Assembly: GCA_001949185.1 (NCBI GenBank)
Contig: BDGG01000041.1
Span: forward strand, 1 to 6,779
Length of the DNA: 6,779 nucleotides
Direction: 5' to 3'
From: Ramazzottius varieornatus
Taxonomy: Eukaryota; Animalia; Tardigrada
Made by a program: the position numbers and the translations under genes. Of the stretch, positions 27 to 6,779 are shown piece by piece. How positions within the stretch are numbered: the stretch's first letter is position 1; every line of letters starts with the position of its first letter. The notes beneath the pieces were generated by a model that saw only the letters and a program-made list of their open reading frames with translations, did no database searches and was not told where the DNA came from.

Positions 27-2345
27 GTACAGCCGTAAGGGAACTCCCACCCAGAAAATGTTCAAAGACTTCTCTGACCGCTCTGCGGTCGAACTTGCTG
101 CATTGATGACGGTGAGTGGTCTGGCTCAATGGGGTTTTTTGCAGAAGATCGGCGAACAAGAATGCGATCATGTTTCACGTACCTGCATACACTACAGCGT
201 ACAGCTATTGCGGACCAGAAGTACCCATGTTTCACGAGCCTGCATACGCCGAGCCGTACATTTTTCTTGTGTTGTTTTTGCAGAACAACAGTCCGCAGAT
301 GGAATGTCAGATCTGCCTCGCTTTCCTGTTGGACATCCAGCTGTACCCCGGTGTTCCGAACCTTCCCACGGACACCGAGACTACTCGTTCTTATGCGGGA
401 AGTTGGTTGCTGATGGGGGATGTGGAAATTTCTTCCACCGAGGCTGCCTCAGCATGGTCATCCGCCACGGCAAACCATGCCCGAAGTGCACGTAACTGCT
501 TTCTTAATTTTACTTTTTTCTGCCGAATATTTTGCGTGGCATTGGGAATTCGCTCTAACGTGTCGTCTGTGATTGCAGTAGAATAGTGAGGAACATCAAC
601 CTCTGTCCCCCTGTCGTCCAAGGCACTGTGGACGCGATGGACATCTGGACATCGGCTGCCACGGCCCTGACTGGACAGCTAACGCTGCTTCATAGTGGGC
701 TGGAAGCAACCCGGGCGCAATATGCAGCCGTCACTGCGGAACGAGAAGAAGTCCAGCGTCAGAACCGACGGTTACTGCGCGAGGTTGCTGCGCTTAGGCG
801 GGGAACTCCCTATCCGGTTGAGCAACCACCAACGTCCGACGCGTCGACCAGCACGGAAGCAAGCGTCTACGCAAACGCGTCCACATCCACAAAGCAGGTC
901 GTCATGGTCAGCTCTTCCACTTCTACAGATGGTGTCAGTGGCTTTCTCCTCCGTAAAGCGCTTCTTAGCTGCTTGTTCCGACAAGGTGTGGAGCATTTGT
1001 TGGGAATTATTCCCGTAGGGCTTGGTCGCCGCCGATTGCTGTGTTCGTTCCTCGAGTCCTTCCATTTGCTAGAGGAGCTGGATGAGCTTGTTTGGAACCG
1101 TGCAGAGTAGGTGTCGTATTATGAGTGGCGCACGCTTCCAGCCACCAATAATGAAAACGTGCACCACTTCAACAAACTCGACAAGATAGTCTTCCCCAGT
1201 GGCGCACGCTTCAACCATTAATAACGAAAACGTGCGCCACTTGAGATAACGATTTTGTACGTTCATTTGTTCCGCTCTCAACTAATTCTCACGGAATATT
1301 CGGTTATTTTGAATGTTCTCTCTTATAGCGGAGTGAATGTTGACGATGCAGGAAGGACCCTCCATAGAGTGATGGCCGAAAAGCGCTGGTCTCGAGAAAA
1401 TCCGGCGTTTCACCAGCTTCCTTGCCTTCTTTGGAGCCCGTCCTGCCCTCGTGGCTGCCTTCGCTCTTCCGGTCGACTGCGTTCGACCTGCCCATACCTT
1501 CTCGTCTTGTGGAATCGATACAGTAGAATATAAGGAAGCCATGCAGTACGTTGAAGCCATCCTTCGACCCTTTTTCCACCGTGATGGAGGGAATATTGAG
1601 GTAAGCTCACCCCGATACTTTTACCGTGAAAAACAGTTCCGGCATTCTTCGCCATCAGAACTTCTTTCGAAACGTGGTCTTGTTTACAGGTGATCAAGGC
1701 CACCTGCCTCGCATTGGGAACTCCCTTCTTCACCAAGCTCATCTTTCCAGTTGACGGAGGTGCTCTCGGCAGTGAGTTCCACAGCCGAAAGATCTTGGAC
1801 AGCCTCCGTATCACTCTTCGAACAGAAAGAGACAGGTAAGCATCAATGCGGTCAAACATTAGTCCAACAAAGTATCAAGGTCCTTCTGTTGTTTGTAGAA
1901 GTCCTGTGACTCGTTTTCTTCCTTCTCCCATCCAGTTGGCCTGCTACTTGTGTCCCGCAACTGCCGGAAAGATTTCCTGGAAGGACTACAATGTCCATGT
2001 CGTCAGCCAGCACGATGTTGAGGTGCGTCACTCATATCTTTTCATATATTACTTCATGTGAGACATAATTTCCTCTAGGTCACGAGCAACTCTCCGCGAT
2101 GTGAGCGATGCCTGCTCCTGCTGAAGGATCTGTCGGTCGAACAGAGGCTCCACCACGCCTGTTACTGCCCGAAGCGACAAGCTCCTTTGCTGGCCAGTCC
2201 GACCTTTTCCTGGGGTCGCAAAGCACCGGAGCCCGTTGGAGTCCGCCTCCCTGCACCGAATTTTCCTGTGGTATTTGGCGAAGTAGATGTTGAGGTACTT
2301 ACTCTTAACGAGAACTACATTGAAGTTTCTTTCCGCAGTTTTTGA
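27..2345 (+). CDS. Multi-exon zinc-finger protein, putative E3 ubiquitin ligase (C4HC3 RING/PHD-like + coiled coil + C2H2 + UBZ4-like); 5' partial and frameshifted (possible pseudogene or assembly indels). Exons 27..111, 284..491, 579..1106, 1329..1600, 1690..1835, 1936..2022, 2079..2345
   Basis: GT-AG introns at 112..283, 492..578, 1107..1328, 1601..1689, 1836..1935, 2023..2078. Junction phases agree: ALMT|NNSPQMECQICL; CPKCT|RIVRNINL; WNRAD|GVNV; GGNIE|VIKATC; SQHDVE|VTSNSPRCERC. Motifs: CQIC...CGKLVADGGCGNFFHRGCL...CPKC; heptad-like LEATRAQYAAVTAEREEVQRQNRRLLREVAALR; CYLC-x14-HVVSQH; CERC-x14-HACYC. The frame must change inside exons 284..491, 1329..1600 and 1690..1835. The 3' end is uncertain (a possible extra 44-nt intron at 2295..2338). 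Confidence 0.68.
169..260 (+). repeat. Imperfect 35-bp direct repeat (period 57) in intron 112..283
   Basis: CATGTTTCACGTACCTGCATACACTACAGCGTACA (169-203) vs CATGTTTCACGAGCCTGCATACGCCGAGCCGTACA (226-260); 27/35 identical. Confidence 0.85.
1124..1241. repeat. Two tandem copies (period 74) of a 44-45 bp unit, each bounded by 11-bp inverted repeats
   Basis: AGTGGCGCACG(1124-1134)...CGTGCACCACT(1158-1168, 1 mismatch) and AGTGGCGCACG(1198-1208)...CGTGCGCCACT(1231-1241, perfect). Lies in intron 1107..1328. Confidence 0.9.
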
Positions 2346-2425
2346 AGTGGGAACTCCCTATCCGTTTTACTTCGCGTACGAATAATGTCTTTCGTTCTTT
2401 CGTATTTTGTCTTACATGATCCGTT

Positions 2426-5137
2426 TTACATGATAGTGTGAAGCGAGGGTGGAATCATCGCGAATTCGGCATGAATAAAATCGTTTGCCAACACAATCAC
2501 AAGAGGACGCAATAGATCATCGACAGAAACAATTAATTTTCGGTAGGTCTGCGCACACTTTCGAAAGAAATTCTGGGAACTCCCATCCGGTAACCGAAGA
2601 CTCCTCACAGGACGGGAGTCAAACTGTTGCACCACACAGAAAATACTACACTTTCGTTCCAAATCAGCATAAAGATGCCAACAATCTGGACAACCGATCC
2701 GTCTGCAGTACAAAAAAAGGTGTTATCGAATTTTGTGCTTTTACGGGTACCTTGACAGTCCATCAAGATGTTGTCGTCTCGAAGCAGGCGTGAGGCGAAG
2801 CAGGTTCGGCCGCGTTCCAAACCTTCCCGACAGCATGGGAGTTCCCTCAGAAGATCCAACGTTGCTGGATCATCTGAGATGTTCACTGTTGATCCTTGGA
2901 TTAGATAGTAGTGCTTGGTCCGTTCGACATGAGTACCACCCATGATATAGGCCGGGTCTCTCTCCGGACAGAGATGGCGAAACAGGAAGTTGTCCTGCAG
3001 ATACTTGCGTAACATTTGGCTTTCGAGAGCAGCTGATCCTTTCACCGCCCGCATCTCTCGACCCAAGAAGTCTTCAAAGTAAAAACAGCCCAAATGGTAA
3101 ATCGGCCCCCAGTCTAGTCCGTTTTGAGCCAAATGTCTTAGCTGGTGCACGTTGTACACCATGCGCTTGAGGCCATAAATTTGCTGATAATTATGGCAGA
3201 ATCTTTCGATGAGGATTCTGGCATTCTCGATGTTTACTTCTCTGGCGGAAGCAACAAATGACACGTCAGCTAGAAGTAAATGCAACGCCAACGAGAGGTC
3301 CATTGCATTCTCGAACAGGAGACCCGGAAGTACGTCTTTGAAACAGAAAAAGAAGCCGTACAGTAGTAGGTTGACGTACTCTGATGCATGACTTTCTCCA
3401 CTTCGGCTGAGAGGTACCAATGTGCGCTTGAAGGCTGACGGAAATCTGAGGGGACTCCCATACGGACTCCCACAGAAAGGGGACTCCCATACGGTCAGAT
3501 GGATGCATATGCACCGATCAAAATTTCGACGACAGGTTAACCAGTACAGAATCTGTTTGAATGCTAATGTGATACCTGAAATGCTTCATTCTTTGGTCGA
3601 CGATGCGTTCTTCTCGTTCGCCAACAATAAGTTCCGTCGTGTTGGCGGTTTGGGAAGCGAAAGGAAAAGTAATCTTTTTCAGCTTGCACCAGTTTGTCAT
3701 CAGGCCTGTTTTCACTACTCCAAGGGCTACACAGTGCATGTAGTCATGCGTGGAACCCCGAACCGGGCAAAAGCTGGAGATGCGGAGCAGTCTTGTTGCG
3801 TACCTCACGCCAAACACGGGAACTCCCTTCCGCAAAGCTTGCTCAGCACATTGTATTACAGAACGACGTGTTCGAAGCTTCATGTGAGTTTCTGCTGGGT
3901 ACTTTCTGGCCTCTTTTGACCCTTCCTTCTTCATTCCGGAATCGAAACATGTCGTACAACCGTGTTCCGCGTGGAACGAGGAAAGCCCCAGTGCGTCCCA
4001 TCTGGCTTGAGCGTCCGAGTTGAACAAAGGAGCCTTCACGTATGTAGTTCTGAGAGTTCCCTTGTCATCGGTCCAGTCGAGGCCGTTCTTTTCTAAAGCG
4101 AAAACTTCTGAAGAAAAAAAGTCCATCAGCATCTGCGAAGGTGGATGGGATTTCCCTACTGCCAGCGCATGCAGGAAGCGATGTCTGTAGCGTTTTCTTG
4201 AAGGAAGCTCATTGATGATGAAGGACAACATCTTGGTTGAGCCGTTCTTGCTTCCGTTGATGCCGAAGGTCAGCCCGTCATCGACATGGAAGGTCAGCGA
4301 AACATCATCCGGTCCCACGGTCATCTTCTCGTATTTGATCCCGTCGAACAAGTCGAAGTCACGTCCCTCGCTGTTAGCAGGACGGCGATACACGAACACA
4401 TCGTGGCCTACCACCGACTCGAAGTACATCTTCAATGATTCTCTCACACTAATCGTGAAGAATGCCCCACAGATCTCCCTGTCTTCTTCTTTTCCGGTCA
4501 GGTTCAGCTGGCAGGAATCGGAACCACAGGAACCCGTCCCACACAGTCCAGCAGCGTGACCGACATAGTTTCCGTGTTCGAGGCAGTAGTAGTGCTTCAT
4601 GGTCGCCATGTAATGCGGCTCAAGCATCTTGTCGAAGAAGTACAGGTTGCTTGGGAAGTCCGATTTGCTGTTATGCTTCGCCTTTATGTGACGAAGCATT
4701 CTATCCTGATGCTCTCTTGTCATTCCTTGGACGTCCTTGAGGAAGTGGACCACTGATTCAAACGTGGAGTTATCATCGTACTTCTCTGCAGTTCTTTCAT
4801 CCATCATTTCAGACTCGCTTTCTACGTTATCGCATGGAAACTCCCTATCCGCGCCCAGTCCCTCCTCGCACACGTGCTCGTTACTTTCTCCTTCATCTTC
4901 GGACGTGCTCGGATGGCTGGCAGTTTCTTCGTTCCTGCGAATGTCTTCCACATTCTGAAACAAAAATGATCAAGGCGATTCTCAATCAACAGTCAAGGGA
5001 ATTCCCACAGTCCCGCTACGAACAGATGATCTTACCTCATTACGCCGTGGTAAGTAACGTAGTAATCCACGGCTCCTCACTCTAGTCGAAGGCGTACATA
5101 CGCTGTAAACCCTTCTTCGCTTTCTTGGCTTAAACAT
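2426..5137 (-). CDS. CACTA/EnSpm (CMC superfamily) DDE transposase; exons complement(5036..5137, 3576..4954, 2605..3445), 773 aa as written, or about 833 aa ending at 2426 if a 1-nt frameshift near 2640-2675 is repaired
   Basis: Exon 1 MFKPRKRRR...RNE (NLS-like) joins in phase 0 via GAG|GTAAGA...TTTTTGTTTCAG (intron 4955..5035) to the 481-aa ORF. A phase-2 intron 3446..3575 (CAG|GTATCA...CCCCTCAG) joins it to the 271-aa ORF, giving MKHFRFPSAFKRTLVPLSRSGESHASEY. Family motifs: FDGIKY, SLTFHVDDG (D1 about 4277-4282), INELP..R, NSDAQAR (D2 4013-4015), GCTTC (C(2)C 3947-3958), DYMH..LGVVK (3734-3745), ASE..LLY, NVHQLRHL (H(3)H 3133-3147), GPI...CFYFE (E 3073-3075). Family assignment is from recalled motifs, not from a search. 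Confidence 0.9.
2474..2479 (+). promoter_or_regulatory. Candidate polyadenylation signal for the RING/zinc-finger gene
   Basis: AATAAA about 130 nt after the TGA at 2343-2345; it overlaps the antisense C-terminal transposase coding segment. Confidence 0.35.
3450..3494 (+). repeat. Tandem 16-bp repeat GGGGACTCCCATACGG x2 with a partial third core, in transposase intron 2
   Basis: Exact copies at 3450-3465 and 3479-3494, with GGACTCCCA between them (3464-3472). Confidence 0.9.
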
Positions 5138-5592
5138 TCTAGGCCGAAACGAGCAAAACTACGGAGAAAAGTCTCAACCGGAAGCTGAATCCCAACTGCG
5201 TAACTATAAAGCAGGGTTGTGGCACAACTGCTAGTCAGTTTGAGTACTGGAATGAAAACGCAGCGTTAACAGACAGTCGAGCTATCCAGTTGGTTGATAC
5301 TTTGCAAAGACACGCTGAGCGTATTACAAAATCAATTGATCAACTGGTGCCGGAAAACCGAAAATTACATCGTTACGGGGAACCATCGTTGAGTTTCCGA
5401 AAACCCGGATATTACACCCTCCGGAACACAAGCGGATAGACCGCAGCGCTGGGTTATTCTGGACGGGAACTCCCACACGGTCGTAATGACCAGACTGGAT
5501 CACTGATTTCTCTTTAGTGATCCCATACTCTTCCTTCTTTTGACTGCTCCTTTGCTTTGGTAGGTTTTGCGGAATACGTGCACAAAGCCAGG
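5138..5592. promoter_or_regulatory. Probable bidirectional promoter/5'UTR region between the transposase and the Tudor-like gene
   Basis: Lies between divergent ATGs. Contains TATAAA (5205-5210, +), CAACTG at 5193, 5225, 5341 and on - at 5287, the palindrome ATCAATTGAT (5331-5340) and one GGGAACTCCC (5465). Confidence 0.5.
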
Positions 5593-6779
5593 ATGGCAGC
5601 CAGACGACGAACGAGGAACAACTCCGTGGAAGAAGAGGACGCTGAGCTACCTGAAGAAGCCTCCAAAACAACGGGTACTGCTCACCACTGAGGGTGCACC
5701 AAGACTTTCTAGCCTAGCTTTGCCGGTTTATTCTTCCCCTTTTCAGGTCGATCGACCCGAAAACGCACTGTCAAAGACATGGCGGAGTCTGAAGAAGATC
5801 CAGAAAAGCAACGTCTGCAGAAAGCTCACAGCAAACGTAAGTTGTATGCAGCTTGGCTGATGAACGGGTCGGGAATTCCCAGTCTTACATTTTTCATTGG
5901 TTCATGATGTTCTTACGGGAAGCTTATTGTTTCTGCAGATTACATCGTCATCATGTTTGTCGACCAGAGATGCATGATGCTAAACATGGCGGGCCAGAAA
6001 GCGGGTCAGAAATGGAAGCTTGATGATCGTGCTGTTTACGGCGACAATCTTCAAGTTGGTGATTTCATCATCGTCCAGCATCCCTTCAAAATGGACCAAT
6101 TTCAACAATGGTCCAGAGCCGAAATCCGAATGGTCACGTCTGTGCGAAAGTCTGCCGATGGTCTAGTTAAACAACTAGAAGAGAGGGCCATTGTACGTAC
6201 AGATCAACTTTGATGTGTTTTGATCCAGTCTTTGTTATTATTGTGTTATACTGTAACATATGAAGCTGGCCGCAAAAACGGGTTGGGAACTCCCAGTCTG
6301 TTTGAACCTGCAGAGTTTCCCGCAGAAATTTTCCGTATTCCATTTGCAGGGAAGATCTCGAAAGAAAGCTTGCGAACAGCTTTCCCCTTCCCACCAGGAG
6401 AAAGAACAGAGCTTTGTGAATGGCCTGTTCGCTGACTTGGACGGCCCAAAGTCTACACCTGATCGTGAACCTTCTCCTGAAAACTATCTTCCCGAAGAAT
6501 CACAGCAGCTGGATTTGCCTATGACGCAGGACAACGATTCGAGTCTCGGTGAGGAAAACTCCGCCATAGCGAGACAGTCAATACCGGATCAAGCGATCAT
6601 ACCAACGCCGCTGTCAAGTTGCAGCACCGGACAAGGACGCGACAGACATCGTGAAGCCTCACCTGCCTCTCGCTTCACGTCTAATGGAGGACAATGGAAG
6701 TTTGATCCTTTTACTGGGCGCCGATTGACAGGTACGGACCCTCACTACCCGCATGACGTCACAAGTGTGTTTTTCGCTG
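5593..6779 (+). CDS. Multi-exon accessory protein with a Tudor/SH3-like barrel followed by a disordered acidic/Ser-Pro region; 3' partial. Exons 5593..5674, 5747..5836, 5939..6192, 6350..6731
   Basis: Introns 5675..5746 (phase 1), 5837..5938 (phase 1, GTAAGT...TTTCTGCAG) and 6193..6349 (phase 0) splice into one stop-free frame: MAARRRTRNNSVEEEDAELPEEASKTT-GRSTRKRTVKDMAESEEDPEKQRLQKAHSK-HYIVIMFVDQ...LQVGDFIIVQHPFKMDQFQQWSRAEI...EERAI-GRSRKK...WKFDPFTGRRLT. Probable next donor CAG|GTACGG at 6732. An acceptor at 5563|5564 implies a further upstream exon (UTR or coding). Confidence 0.75.

What the first reader, a model, noticed from the sequence alone, without database searches (positions are those of the whole stretch)
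39..6294. A kappaB-like 10-mer tiles the whole locus, including coding exons of two of its genes
Seen: 9 exact GGGAACTCCC (8 on +, 1 on -), 2 GGGAATTCCC and about 6 close variants in 6.8 kb. A given 10-mer is expected roughly 0.01 times on both strands at even base composition. Copies sit in introns (544, 3450, 3479, 4997, 5871, 6285), in non-coding spacers (2349, 5465) and in exons in different frames and strands (GTP x3 in gene A; DGSSQ, RELP, KGVP, KGTL, GKSH, REFP in the transposase), so the constraint acts on DNA rather than protein. Many copies extend into a CG-containing tail (TATCCG at 801, 2349, 4836; ATCCGG; ATACGG x2; ACACGG; TTCCG). Known: En/Spm TnpA binds short motifs mainly in subterminal repeats; Arabidopsis VANC proteins bind short motifs spread within VANDAL elements to counter silencing; the core also fits the NF-kB/Rel consensus GGGRNNYYCC. 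Inference: an element-wide self-recognition code bound by an element-encoded protein (anti-silencing or transpososome assembly), or recruitment of a host Rel-family factor.
Basis: partly seen in the sequence, partly recalled or inferred. Interest (0 to 1): 0.88.

Follow-up and report, generated by a model that had tools for sequence, protein, structure and literature searches.

The report
Family-specific DNA address code tiling a transposon
A jumping gene of the tardigrade Ramazzottius varieornatus carries about 21 evenly spaced copies of one short DNA word, some inside its own coding exons, and an older sister jumping gene has a different word at the same places, so these look like docking sites for a protein the element itself encodes.

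Summary
The window has 9 exact GGGAACTCCC (0.01 expected) and 16 sites at one mismatch or fewer.

The window is the interior of a ~9.48 kb DNA transposon of Ramazzottius varieornatus. It has 13-bp inverted ends (CCCTATCCAGAAA), 3-bp target duplications, and a divergent CACTA/Mirage/Chapaev-type transposase.

The real motif is a directional 16-mer, GGGAACTCCC-W-N-N-C-K-G. The full element holds 21 sites, 18 on one strand, spaced more evenly than chance, and none lies in 28 kb of flanking DNA. Genome-wide, 54 of 104 exact copies lie in this family; the rest match background.

Three new results:
- A 1.67 kb non-autonomous relative shares only its termini and two motif copies with the main element.
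- A sister family (transposase 46-50% identical) lacks the motif but has GGGGTATACCCC. At least three of its sites sit at homologous positions, one inside the same Gly-X-Pro codons.
- Each family uses its own central four bases in a shared GGG-N4-CCC frame.

This supports sites for an element-encoded, family-specific DNA-binding protein, analogous to plant VANC or TnpA systems. A host Rel factor is unlikely, because tardigrades lack NF-kB. No binding protein has been identified, and RNA-seq and foreign contigs were unavailable.

The parts
39..54 (+). Motif site, exact core (GGGAACTCCCACCCAG). It lies 19 bp upstream of the annotated ATG of gene A1, so it is in the promoter or 5' UTR and is not coding.
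58..1107 (+). Gene A1 (RvY_19353 / RvY_19391 / RvY_00493 models). It encodes a RING-like Cys/His region and a long confident helix. Exons are 58-111, 284-454, 580-747 and 751-1107. The window copy is frameshifted in the RING-like part relative to the C1 copy.
544..553 (+). Degenerate motif copy (GGGAATTCGC, 2 mismatches) in an A1 intron. It shares its 5' flank with the site at 1716.
   Evidence: (D10)
801..816 (+). Motif site, exact core with tail TATCCG, inside annotated A1 coding sequence (RRGTPYP). A foreign homologue at 60% identity has RRGIANP here.
1124..1270 (.). Unrelated high-copy MITE-like inverted repeat, inserted in the intron between 1105 and 1329.
1330..2420 (+). Gene A2 block. 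These are predicted exons conserved with the sister family (about 1391-1600, 1690-1836, 1888-2022, 2079-2294). It contains a conserved C-x2-C...H-x4-H zinc-finger-like motif. The exon borders are my inference.
1716..1731 (+). Motif site, exact core, in a predicted A2 exon (LGTPF). The sister family has GLP (GGACTTCCG) here, so this site is specific to the main family.
2349..2364 (+). Motif site, exact core with tail TATCCG. Its position is homologous to sister-family site D (GGGTATACCC), with alignable flanks on both sides.
2575..2590 (+). Motif site, exact core, downstream of the transposase stop codon. It is one arm of the 17-bp overlap at the junction of the 2.2-kb internal deletion in the C1 copy.
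2605..5137 (-). Transposase gene (RvY_19356). Exons are 5137-5036, 4954 to about 3576, and about 3447-2605. It is a divergent member of the CACTA/Mirage/Chapaev superfamily. The ORFs of 481 and 271 aa are intact.
2831..2846 (-). Motif site, exact core on the minus strand, in transposase exon 2 (RELP).
3450..3494 (+). Two copies of AGGGGACTCCCATACGG, 29 bp apart, in the transposase intron. The first copy abuts the 3' splice site. The sister family has no intron at this position.
   Evidence: (D1)
3818..3833 (+). Motif site, exact core, inside transposase codons K-G-V-P (AAG GGA GTT CCC). It is homologous to sister-family site B, codons T-G-T/I-P-H (GGT ACA/ATA CCC C).
4052..4061 (-). One-mismatch copy (GGGAACTCTC) in transposase coding sequence (KGTL). 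There is no counterpart in the sister family, and it could be chance.
4147..4156 (-). One-mismatch copy (GGGAAATCCC) in transposase coding sequence (GKSH). There is no counterpart in the sister family.
4836..4851 (+). One-mismatch copy (GGAAACTCCCTATCCG) in transposase coding sequence (REFP). It is the other arm of the deletion junction in the C1 copy.
4997..5012 (+). GGGAATTCCC site in the first intron of the transposase model (intron about 4955-5035).
5465..5480 (+). Motif site, exact core, in the divergent intergenic region between the transposase (ATG at 5137, minus strand) and gene C (ATG at 5593). Sister site A lies in the same intergenic region.
5593..6779 (+). Gene C (RvY_19357, partial). 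Exons are 5593-5676, 5749-5835, 5941-6192 and 6350 onward. The gene continues about 1.9 kb beyond the window. It is conserved in the sister family and its function is unknown.
5871..5886 (+). GGGAATTCCC site in gene C intron 2. Sister site F lies in the homologous intron.
6285..6300 (+). Motif site, exact core, in gene C intron 3.

Best explanation
The repeated word is a set of docking sites for a sequence-specific DNA-binding protein encoded by the transposon itself, probably acting as a dimer.

**Proposed recognition.**
- Each site has two outer half-sites, GGG and CCC.
- A central four bases (AACT, AATT or GACT in this family) and a 3' tail (W-N-N-C-K-G) give family specificity and direction.
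- About 21 sites are laid along the whole 9.5 kb element, on average every ~430 bp and never more than 915 bp apart, almost all pointing the same way.

**Proposed function.** The bound protein would label the entire element as 'self'. I take the most likely purpose to be control of the element's own expression or chromatin state, that is activation or protection from silencing. This would resemble plant VANC proteins on VANDAL elements and TnpA on Spm elements.

**Shown versus inferred.**
- Shown: enrichment, confinement to the family, orientation bias, even spacing, retention in a non-autonomous relative, and the swap of the core at conserved positions in a sister family.
- Inferred: that a protein binds these sites, which protein it is, and what binding achieves. 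Candidates are the A2 zinc-finger-like protein, the A1 coiled-coil protein, gene C, or the transposase.
For: 1. **Enrichment and confinement.**
   - The window has 9 exact copies against 0.01 expected.
   - The full element has 11 exact copies and 21 at one mismatch or fewer.
   - There are none in about 28 kb of flanking DNA.
   - Genome-wide, 54 of 104 exact copies are in this family. The other 50 amount to 0.9 per Mb, close to the reversed-word control of 31.
   - No other k-mer is repeated in the element.
2. **Directionality and tiling.**
   - 18 of 21 sites are on one strand (P=0.0015).
   - Gap CV is 0.56 against 0.93 for random placement (P=0.004).
   - The largest gap is 915 bp against 1591 bp expected (P=0.006).
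3. **Non-autonomous relative.** A 1.67-kb element with about 6-8 copies and its own 3-bp target duplication shares only 110 bp and 52 bp of termini with the main element. It still has two exact motif copies.
4. **Sister family.**
   - It is colinear, its transposase is 46-50% identical, and it has CCC...GGG ends and 3-bp duplications.
   - It has no GGGAACTCCC. Instead it has 3-5 dispersed GGGGTATACCCC or GGGGTGTACCCC per copy, and 14 of about 20 genomic sites lie in its 6 copies.
   - Three of its 7 sites map exactly onto main-family sites at 3818, 2349 and 7496. Two more lie in the same intron or intergenic region. P is about 1e-4.
5. **Coding overlap.** At the shared Gly-X-Pro codons, X and the codon choices follow each family's motif. 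Foreign homologues have other residues there.
6. **Family-pure cores.** All 18 GGG-N4-CCC words in the main element have N4 = AACT, GACT, AATT or AAAT. The sister copies have TATA or TACA. Flanking DNA has random N4.
7. **Published analogues.**
   - VANC21 binds YAGTATTAY motifs arrayed in one orientation at high density, only in its own family (PMC5735166).
   - Spm TnpA proteins have family-specific motifs that co-diversify with element lineages (bioRxiv 10.64898/2026.08.24.746577).
Against: - No binding protein is identified. Pfam finds no DNA-binding domain in any element ORF, and single-sequence structure models were of low confidence.
- No expression, chromatin or binding data could be obtained.
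- Copies within a family diverge as fast inside sites as in the flanks (10/180 against 116/1778). This gives no evidence of constraint within a family, although neutral decay is expected for inserted dead copies.
- The sister family has far fewer sites (about 7) than the main family (21), and several main-family exonic sites have no sister counterpart.
- Both motifs share a GGG-N4-CCC frame, so a host dimer that contacts only the outer triplets is not excluded.
- Unlike VANDAL, the host appears to lack DNMT1/3-type methylation, so any anti-silencing would have to act on another pathway.
Confidence: 0.42

Rival explanations
1. The binder is the same kind (element-encoded and family-specific), but the purpose is mechanical. 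The internal sites would load transposase or a helper along the element and help pair the two short ends of a long (9.5 kb) element to build the transposition complex. Each element tip (CCCTATCC...) would act as a half-site.
For: - The non-autonomous element keeps two motif copies in inverted orientation, 595 and 486 bp from its ends. This is what a cis requirement for mobilisation would predict.
- A 3.66-kb derivative built from two right ends keeps the paired sites.
- The TIR tip CCCTATCCAG matches the second half plus tail of the sites at 801, 2349 and 4836 (CCCTATCCG). In the sister family, the tip CCCACA resembles the tails CCCCACAAA.
Against: - Sites are spread evenly over the whole element rather than concentrated near the ends. 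The first 570 bp at the left end has none.
- All sites point one way instead of being mirror-symmetric about the two ends.
- The match between tip and tail rests on a few sites.
Confidence: 0.25
2. The sites recruit a host transcription factor that binds GGG-N4-CCC as a dimer, for example a Rel-homology (NFAT-like) protein or another family. The element would use it as an enhancer or stress switch.
For: - GGGAACTCCC and GGGAATTCCC fit the kappaB consensus GGGRNYYYCC (direct reading).
- Both transposon families share the outer GGG...CCC frame.
- Tardigrades do keep NFAT-like Rel-homology proteins (PMC7056985).
Against: - No NF-kB, Dorsal, Dif or Relish was found in eight tardigrade species, including this genus.
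- My PF00554 search of the genome found nothing, which is weak evidence.
- Outside the transposon family the motif sits at background density, so no host regulon is visible.
- Each family is pure for its own central four bases and tail. A factor that reads only the outer triplets would not enforce this.
- The sister core GGGGTATACCCC does not fit the kappaB consensus.
Confidence: 0.12
3. The repeats have no function. They would be a mutational by-product, spread inside the element by template switching, filler DNA during gap repair, or gene conversion between short repeats.
For: - The only large internal deletion seen (C1 copy, window 2589 to 4835) has its junction inside two motif copies, so the repeats do take part in recombination.
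- Within-family copies show no extra conservation of sites.
Against: - Sites sit in frame within intact coding exons without disrupting them.
- Spacing is more even than random and orientation is biased.
- Positions are conserved between families while the core is replaced.
- An otherwise unrelated non-autonomous element carries the same word.
Confidence: 0.08
4. The word acts at the RNA or single-strand level, as a splicing signal, a small-RNA target, or a hairpin.
For: - Several copies lie in introns, and one abuts a 3' splice site (3450).
- All three minus-strand copies lie in the minus-strand transposase gene.
Against: - Six plus-strand copies are antisense to the transposase transcript.
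- Copies also lie in intergenic DNA.
- The sites do not fold better than shuffled sequence (z +0.38, -0.81 and -1.26).
- No Rfam family matches.
Confidence: 0.03

Closest known systems
VANC anti-silencing proteins and their YAGTATTAY-type motifs in Arabidopsis VANDAL (Mutator-like) transposons (Hosaka et al. 2017, PMC5735166)
   Same: - A short motif is highly enriched only in one transposon family.
- Many copies are spread through the element in the same orientation.
- Related families carry different motifs.
- Sporadic genomic copies are at low density.
   Different: - The transposon superfamily is different (Mutator-like, not CACTA/Mirage/Chapaev), and so is the kingdom.
- No VANC homologue is present here.
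- VANC motifs are in non-coding regions and often form tandem repeats. Here the sites are single, evenly spaced and also inside coding exons.
- The VANC effect is loss of DNA methylation, which this host probably lacks.
- Binding has not been shown here.
TnpA of En/Spm (CACTA) elements and its family-specific binding motifs (12-bp subterminal repeats in maize, from general knowledge; CCVTCGCAAA clusters in Arabidopsis Spm1, bioRxiv 10.64898/2026.08.24.746577)
   Same: - The transposase superfamily is the same by transitive homology, and the target duplication is 3 bp.
- The element encodes accessory proteins besides the transposase.
- The motifs are family-specific, and the preprint reports that they co-diversify with element lineages.
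   Different: - TnpA motifs cluster at the two termini, in both orientations. Here the sites tile the whole element in one orientation, and the terminal 270-570 bp are poor in them.
- The ends are CCC..., not CACTA.
- No sequence similarity of the accessory ORFs to the transposase or to TnpA was detectable.
NF-kB / Rel kappaB sites (GGGRNYYYCC)
   Same: The main-family core fits the consensus, and GGGAATTCCC is the classical palindromic form. The site has a dimer-like half-site architecture.
   Different: - The host lacks NF-kB proteins according to PMC7056985.
- The extended 16-nt directional motif and the sister core GGGGTATACCCC are not kappaB-like.
- There is no enrichment outside the transposon.

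Membership tests
CACTA/Mirage/Chapaev (CMC) superfamily DNA transposon | Transposase homologous to Transposase_21/tnp2 (PF02992) or the related DUF1258 | tested here: met
   - Direct hmmscan of the 481-aa and 271-aa pieces was silent.
- A profile of the tardigrade proteins finds 1666 relatives.
- Eight of the ten best relatives scanned carry PF02992 and/or PF06869.
- The nearest ESM Atlas clusters are PF02992 and DUF1258, with scores of 0.95-0.96.
- Membership is therefore transitive, and this is a divergent member.
CACTA/Mirage/Chapaev (CMC) superfamily DNA transposon | Target-site duplication of 2-3 bp | tested here: met
   The duplication is 3 bp throughout. Main family: GAT, GAT, CAA. Non-autonomous element: GTG. 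Sister family: GTA, CTG, ATG, AAA.
CACTA/Mirage/Chapaev (CMC) superfamily DNA transposon | Termini beginning 5'-CACTA or 5'-CAC | tested here: not met
   The termini are CCCTATCCAGAAA (main), CCCTATCAAGAAA (non-autonomous), and CCCACATTCC or CCCTAATTAC (sister).
En/Spm-type TnpA subterminal repeat system | Binding motifs clustered in both subterminal regions, in direct and inverted orientation | tested here: not met
   Sites are spread over the whole 9.48 kb and 18 of 21 are on one strand. There is no site in the left 570 bp and one site 270 bp from the right end.
En/Spm-type TnpA subterminal repeat system | Accessory protein related to TnpA or to the transposase DNA-binding domain | tested here: inconclusive
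   No Pfam hit and no similarity between the accessory ORFs and the transposase. Gene models are incomplete.
VANC-like sequence-specific anti-silencing system | Short motif enriched at high density and in one orientation only in the cognate family, with a different motif in related families | tested here: met
VANC-like sequence-specific anti-silencing system | Motifs confined to non-coding regions, often as tandem repeats | tested here: not met
   Five to seven sites lie in coding exons. The only tandem pair is at 3450 and 3479.
VANC-like sequence-specific anti-silencing system | Element-encoded protein binds the motif and removes silencing marks | not testable with these tools
   No binding or chromatin data are available. 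The host has only one weak PF00145 hit.
NF-kB/Rel kappaB site | Sequence fits GGGRNYYYCC | tested here: met
   Direct reading of GGGAACTCCC, GGGAATTCCC and GGGGACTCCC. The sister core GGGGTATACCCC does not fit.
NF-kB/Rel kappaB site | Host encodes an NF-kB/Rel protein that could read it | tested here: not met
   The PF00554 search of the genome gave no match. This is weak, because the search works exon by exon and the controls were silent. The literature reports no NF-kB homologues in tardigrades, only NFAT-like proteins (PMC7056985).
NF-kB/Rel kappaB site | Sites present at host target genes | tested here: not met
   Outside the transposon family there are about 50 exact copies in 55.8 Mb, against a control of 31. 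For GGGRAYTCCC the counts are 225 against a control of 156, before subtracting roughly 75 copies inside the family.

The most novel reading that the evidence does not exclude
An animal DNA transposon carries a VANC/TnpA-like self-recognition system. An element-encoded dimeric factor would read a GGG-N4-CCC 'address' laid at regular intervals of about 430 bp over the entire element, written even through its own coding exons. The factor's specificity (central four bases plus tail) has co-evolved with the sites, so that sister families keep the positions but have swapped the word. This would be the first such system in Metazoa. It would also be the first case in which protein-coding codons of a transposon are visibly shaped by its own address code.
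Probability: 0.4. Interest if true: 0.8.

Novelty: new variant of a known kind. Interest (0 to 1): 0.62.

Why it matters
Sequence-specific self-recognition by transposon-encoded proteins has been demonstrated mainly in plants (VANC, TnpA). It is thought to let a transposon family act on its own copies without disturbing the host.

Here an animal element shows the DNA half of such a system in an unusually clean form:
- One word tiles the element evenly.
- It is retained by a non-autonomous dependant.
- It overlaps codons.
- It is replaced by a different word at the same positions in a sister family.

The case also makes direct tests possible. There is an apparently intact, recently active copy (copies are 97-100% identical) with four candidate proteins, and two natural 'alleles' of the code (AACT against TATA cores) that could be swapped.

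A practical point follows as well. The motif copies act as microhomology for internal deletions, and the family is the cause of several scaffold gaps in this assembly.

Tried and rejected

The DNA around the two foreign transposase homologues (P0002, P0003) and the gene A homologue (P0006) could not be read, so the motif test in another species was not done.
Exon assignments rest on NCBI models and on conservation.
- The JGI metagenome scan for relatives found nothing.

**Protein analyses with no useful result.**
- Direct Pfam scans of all ORFs gave no significant domain. The only hits were weak ones to RING, HALZ and C2H2.
- AlphaFold single-sequence models of gene C (P0008, pLDDT 44) and gene A1 (P0007, pLDDT 52, with only one long helix confident) were too poor for fold searches, so none was run.
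- An all-against-all comparison of element ORFs found no shared domain between the accessory genes and the transposase.

**Tests that were uninformative or negative.**
Within-family copies decay equally in sites and flanks. The comparison between families was the informative one.
- The hairpin or RNA-family reading was rejected.
- Literature searches for the 10-mer found only unrelated uses: kappaB probes, guide RNAs and miRNAs. Searches for tardigrade CMC elements found nothing relevant.

Exons were handled one by one by reference.
- For counting only, I placed three natural overlapping stretches (the left part of the C7 copy, the window, the right part of the C7 copy) in one coordinate frame in a script.

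Full report
**1. The observation**

The window holds 9 exact GGGAACTCCC. Eight are on the + strand (39, 801, 1716, 2349, 2575, 3818, 5465, 6285) and one is on the - strand (2837). Dinucleotide-preserving shuffles give 0.01. There are also 2 GGGAATTCCC, at 4997 and 5871.

At one mismatch or fewer there are 16 distinct sites, against 0.54 strand-hits expected. The copy at 544 has two mismatches.

**2. What the window is**

- The transposase ORF is 100% identical to 'hypothetical protein RvY_19356-2' of Ramazzottius varieornatus.
- The genome is 55.8 Mb in 200 contigs, and the window is the whole of contig C41.
- Near-identical DNA (93-100%) occurs on C1, C2, C7, C11 and C13 and on the small contigs C52, C57 and C171.
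- The copies on C7, C11 and C13 are interrupted by runs of N. The small contigs are therefore probably the unplaced interiors of those copies.

Comparing flanks of five copies fixes the element borders at 530 bp left of window position 1 and 2171 bp right of 6779. The full length is about 9.48 kb.

- The ends are 13-bp inverted repeats, CCCTATCCAGAAA ... TTTCTGGATAGGG.
- They are flanked by 3-bp target duplications (GAT, GAT, CAA).

The transposase (minus strand, 2605-5137; open frames of 481 and 271 aa) gets no direct Pfam hit. Other evidence places it in the CACTA/Mirage/Chapaev superfamily:
- Its nearest ESM Atlas clusters carry PF02992 and DUF1258.
- A profile search finds 1666 relatives.
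- Eight of the ten best relatives scanned carry Transposase_21 and/or DUF1258.

It is therefore a divergent member of that superfamily, with atypical CCC... ends.

NCBI models map exactly onto the window:
- Gene A1: 58-1107, plus strand.
- Transposase exons: 5137-5036 and 4954-3521 (the annotated isoform 2, which runs on to the stop at 3518 rather than splicing at the donor I infer near 3576).
- Gene C: 5593 onward, continuing beyond the window.

A further block, A2 (about 1330-2420), is conserved with the sister family and contains a conserved C-x2-C...H-x4-H motif.

**3. Anatomy of the motif**

Aligning all sites of the full element shows a directional 16-mer. The core GGGAACTCCC is followed by W (21 of 21 sites), N, N, C (17 of 21), K, G (14 of 21).

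- There are 21 sites at one mismatch or fewer in 9.48 kb, and 18 are on the + strand (P=0.0015).
- The gaps between sites are more even than random. The CV is 0.56 against 0.93 (P=0.004), and the largest gap is 915 bp against 1591 bp expected (P=0.006).
- It is the only over-repeated k-mer in the element.
- No copy lies in the roughly 28 kb of flanking DNA that I fetched.

Genome-wide there are 104 exact copies, and the reversed-word control gives 31. By position, 54 of the 104 lie in this family. The remaining 50 give about 0.9 per Mb, against about 1160 per Mb inside the element.

**4. Coding overlap**

- Site 801 lies in annotated A1 coding sequence (RRGTPYP).
- Sites 3818, 4052, 4147 and 4836 lie in the annotated transposase exon.
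- Site 2837 lies in the second transposase exon, which aligns with the C-terminal extension of the foreign homologue P0003.
- Sites 4997, 5871 and 6285 are in annotated introns.
- Sites 3450 and 3479 lie in an intron that the sister family lacks.
- Site 39 is upstream of the annotated start codon, so it is not coding.

**5. A non-autonomous relative**

Ten of the genomic copies form inverted pairs 575 bp apart. They belong to a 1.67-kb repeat with about 6-8 copies at 96-100% identity.

- Its ends are CCCTATCAAGAAA ... TTTCTGGGTAGGG, and its target duplication is GTG.
- It shares only its terminal 110 bp (75% identity) and 52 bp (85% identity) with the main element.
- Beyond the termini it shares nothing except the two exact motif copies.

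A 3.66-kb derivative built from two inverted right ends also keeps the paired sites. Elements that depend on the autonomous copy have thus kept the ends and the word.

**6. A sister family with a different word at the same places**

A protein search of the genome finds older, broken relatives on C6, C1 (two loci) and C2. Their transposases are 46-50% identical to the main one. Two more were found through their motif.

- The copies are 84-98% identical to each other (most aligned blocks 90-95%).
- Their ends are CCCACATTCCACAAA ... GTAATTAGGG, with 3-bp duplications GTA, CTG, ATG and AAA.
- They are colinear with the main element over all three gene blocks.

They contain no GGGAACTCCC-like word. 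Each copy instead has 3-5 dispersed GGGGTATACCCC or GGGGTGTACCCC. Of about 20 such sites in the genome, 14 lie in these six loci.

Mapping the seven distinct sister sites onto the main element:
- Site B falls on window 3817-3818.
- Site D falls on window 2349, with alignable flanks on both sides.
- Site G falls on 7496 in full-element coordinates.
- Site F is in the same gene C intron as 5871.
- Site A is in the same divergent intergenic region as 5465.

The chance of three or more exact coincidences among seven sites is about 1e-4.

At site B the word overlaps conserved Gly-X-Pro codons:
- The main family has K-G-V-P, AAG GGA GTT CCC, which is the reverse complement of its motif.
- The sister family has T-G-T/I-P-H, ACA GGT ACA/ATA CCC CAT, which spells its own motif.
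- Two foreign homologues have Ser and Cys at X.

The residue and the codons therefore follow each family's DNA word. This is the best evidence here that the constraint is on DNA.

Counting all GGG-N4-CCC words shows that each family is pure for its own central four bases:
- Main element: AACT x11, GACT x3, AATT x3, AAAT x1.
- Sister copies: TATA or TACA.
- Flanking DNA: six words with unrelated N4.

The two words are thus variants of one frame, with a family-specific core and tail.

**7. Interpretation**

These are the properties expected of cognate sites for a sequence-specific protein that evolves together with its element:
- family-restricted
- directional
- evenly tiled
- kept by dependants
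- written through codons
- conserved in position while the word changes

Plant systems provide the precedent:
- VANC21 binds YAGTATTAY motifs arrayed in one orientation at high density only in VANDAL21, and related families have other motifs (PMC5735166).
- Spm TnpA proteins bind family-specific motif clusters that co-diversify with lineages (bioRxiv 10.64898/2026.08.24.746577).

Because the sites tile the whole element rather than the subtermini, I favour a role in regulating or marking the element as a whole (0.42). The alternative is a purely mechanical role in building the transposition complex (0.25). That alternative is supported by the retention of sites in non-autonomous elements. It is also supported by the resemblance of the TIR tip CCCTATCC to the second half of three sites.

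The binder is unknown. The candidates are:
- A2, with its conserved zinc-finger-like motif
- A1, with one long confident helix that ends exactly at site 801
- gene C
- the transposase

**8. Rivals**

*Host Rel factor.* The main core fits the kappaB consensus. Against this reading:
- Tardigrades lack NF-kB, Dorsal and Relish and keep only NFAT-like proteins (PMC7056985).
- My PF00554 search was blank, which is weak evidence.
- There is no host regulon-like excess of the word.
- The purity of each family's core argues against a reader of the outer triplets only.

*Mutational by-product.* The 2.2-kb deletion in the C1 copy joins window 2589 to 4835 inside two motif copies (17-bp overlap), so the repeats do recombine. 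This does not explain in-frame exonic sites, even spacing, or positional conservation with a swapped core.

*RNA or hairpin roles.* These are not supported.

*Methylation link for the CG tail.* This is unsupported. The genome shows only one weak PF00145 hit.

**9. Limits**

- Conservation within a family is uninformative, because inserted copies decay neutrally (10/180 against 116/1778).
- Structure models were too poor to search.

**10. Verdict**

The Rel reading is disfavoured.
- Novelty: a new variant of a known kind, namely TE-encoded sequence-specific self-recognition, here in an animal CMC element with tiling through exons and core turnover at conserved positions.
- Interest: 0.62.

Noticed in passing
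window 1124-1270: A MITE-like inverted repeat (arms 1181-1211 and 1228-1258), unrelated to the element, sits in the intron between 1105 and 1329. It has dozens of copies at 71-91% identity across the genome.
   Followed up: partly
window 2573-2589 and 4835-4851; L001 (C1:1417803-1417819): The C1 copy lacks window 2590-4834, which is most of the transposase. The junction is a 17-bp overlap lying inside two motif copies, so the motif acts as microhomology for internal deletion.
   Followed up: partly
window 330-460 compared with C1 copy (P0007 versus P0004): The C1 copy encodes an uninterrupted RING-like Cys/His region (CQIC...CGKL...CGNFFHRGC...CPKC). In the window copy the same region is split between two reading frames by an indel, so gene A1 may be damaged in the copy that has the intact transposase.
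   Followed up: partly
L017 (C1:5444757-5448411): A 3.66-kb derivative is bounded by two inverted copies of the right end of the element (775 and 890 bp), with unrelated DNA of about 2 kb in between.
   Followed up: partly
L003 5802-10000, L004 1-1970, L005 5249-10000, L006 1-4122, L007 5018-7129: Scaffold gaps (runs of N) sit inside the copies on C7, C11 and C13. Contigs C41, C52, C57 and C171 look like the unplaced interiors of those copies, so the copy number in the assembly is uncertain.
   Followed up: no
window 3447-3576, minus strand: The annotated transposase isoform (P0001) reads through a donor site into the intron and stops. The 271-aa downstream exon (2605-3447) aligns with the C-terminal part of the foreign homologue P0003, so the full protein is probably about 780 aa and the public model is incomplete.
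   Followed up: partly
genome G000, C4:3208818-3208955: This is the only match to the cytosine-5 DNA methylase family (23.8 bits, N-terminal motif only). The genome may lack DNMT1/3-type enzymes.
   Followed up: no
L018 4661-4915 (C6 copy of the sister family): The sister family has a 254-bp insertion or intron in the transposase gene at the point equivalent to window 3235. It contains one of that family's own motif sites. The main family instead has an intron elsewhere (3447-3576) holding two sites. In both families an intron gained in one lineage only carries the word.
   Followed up: partly
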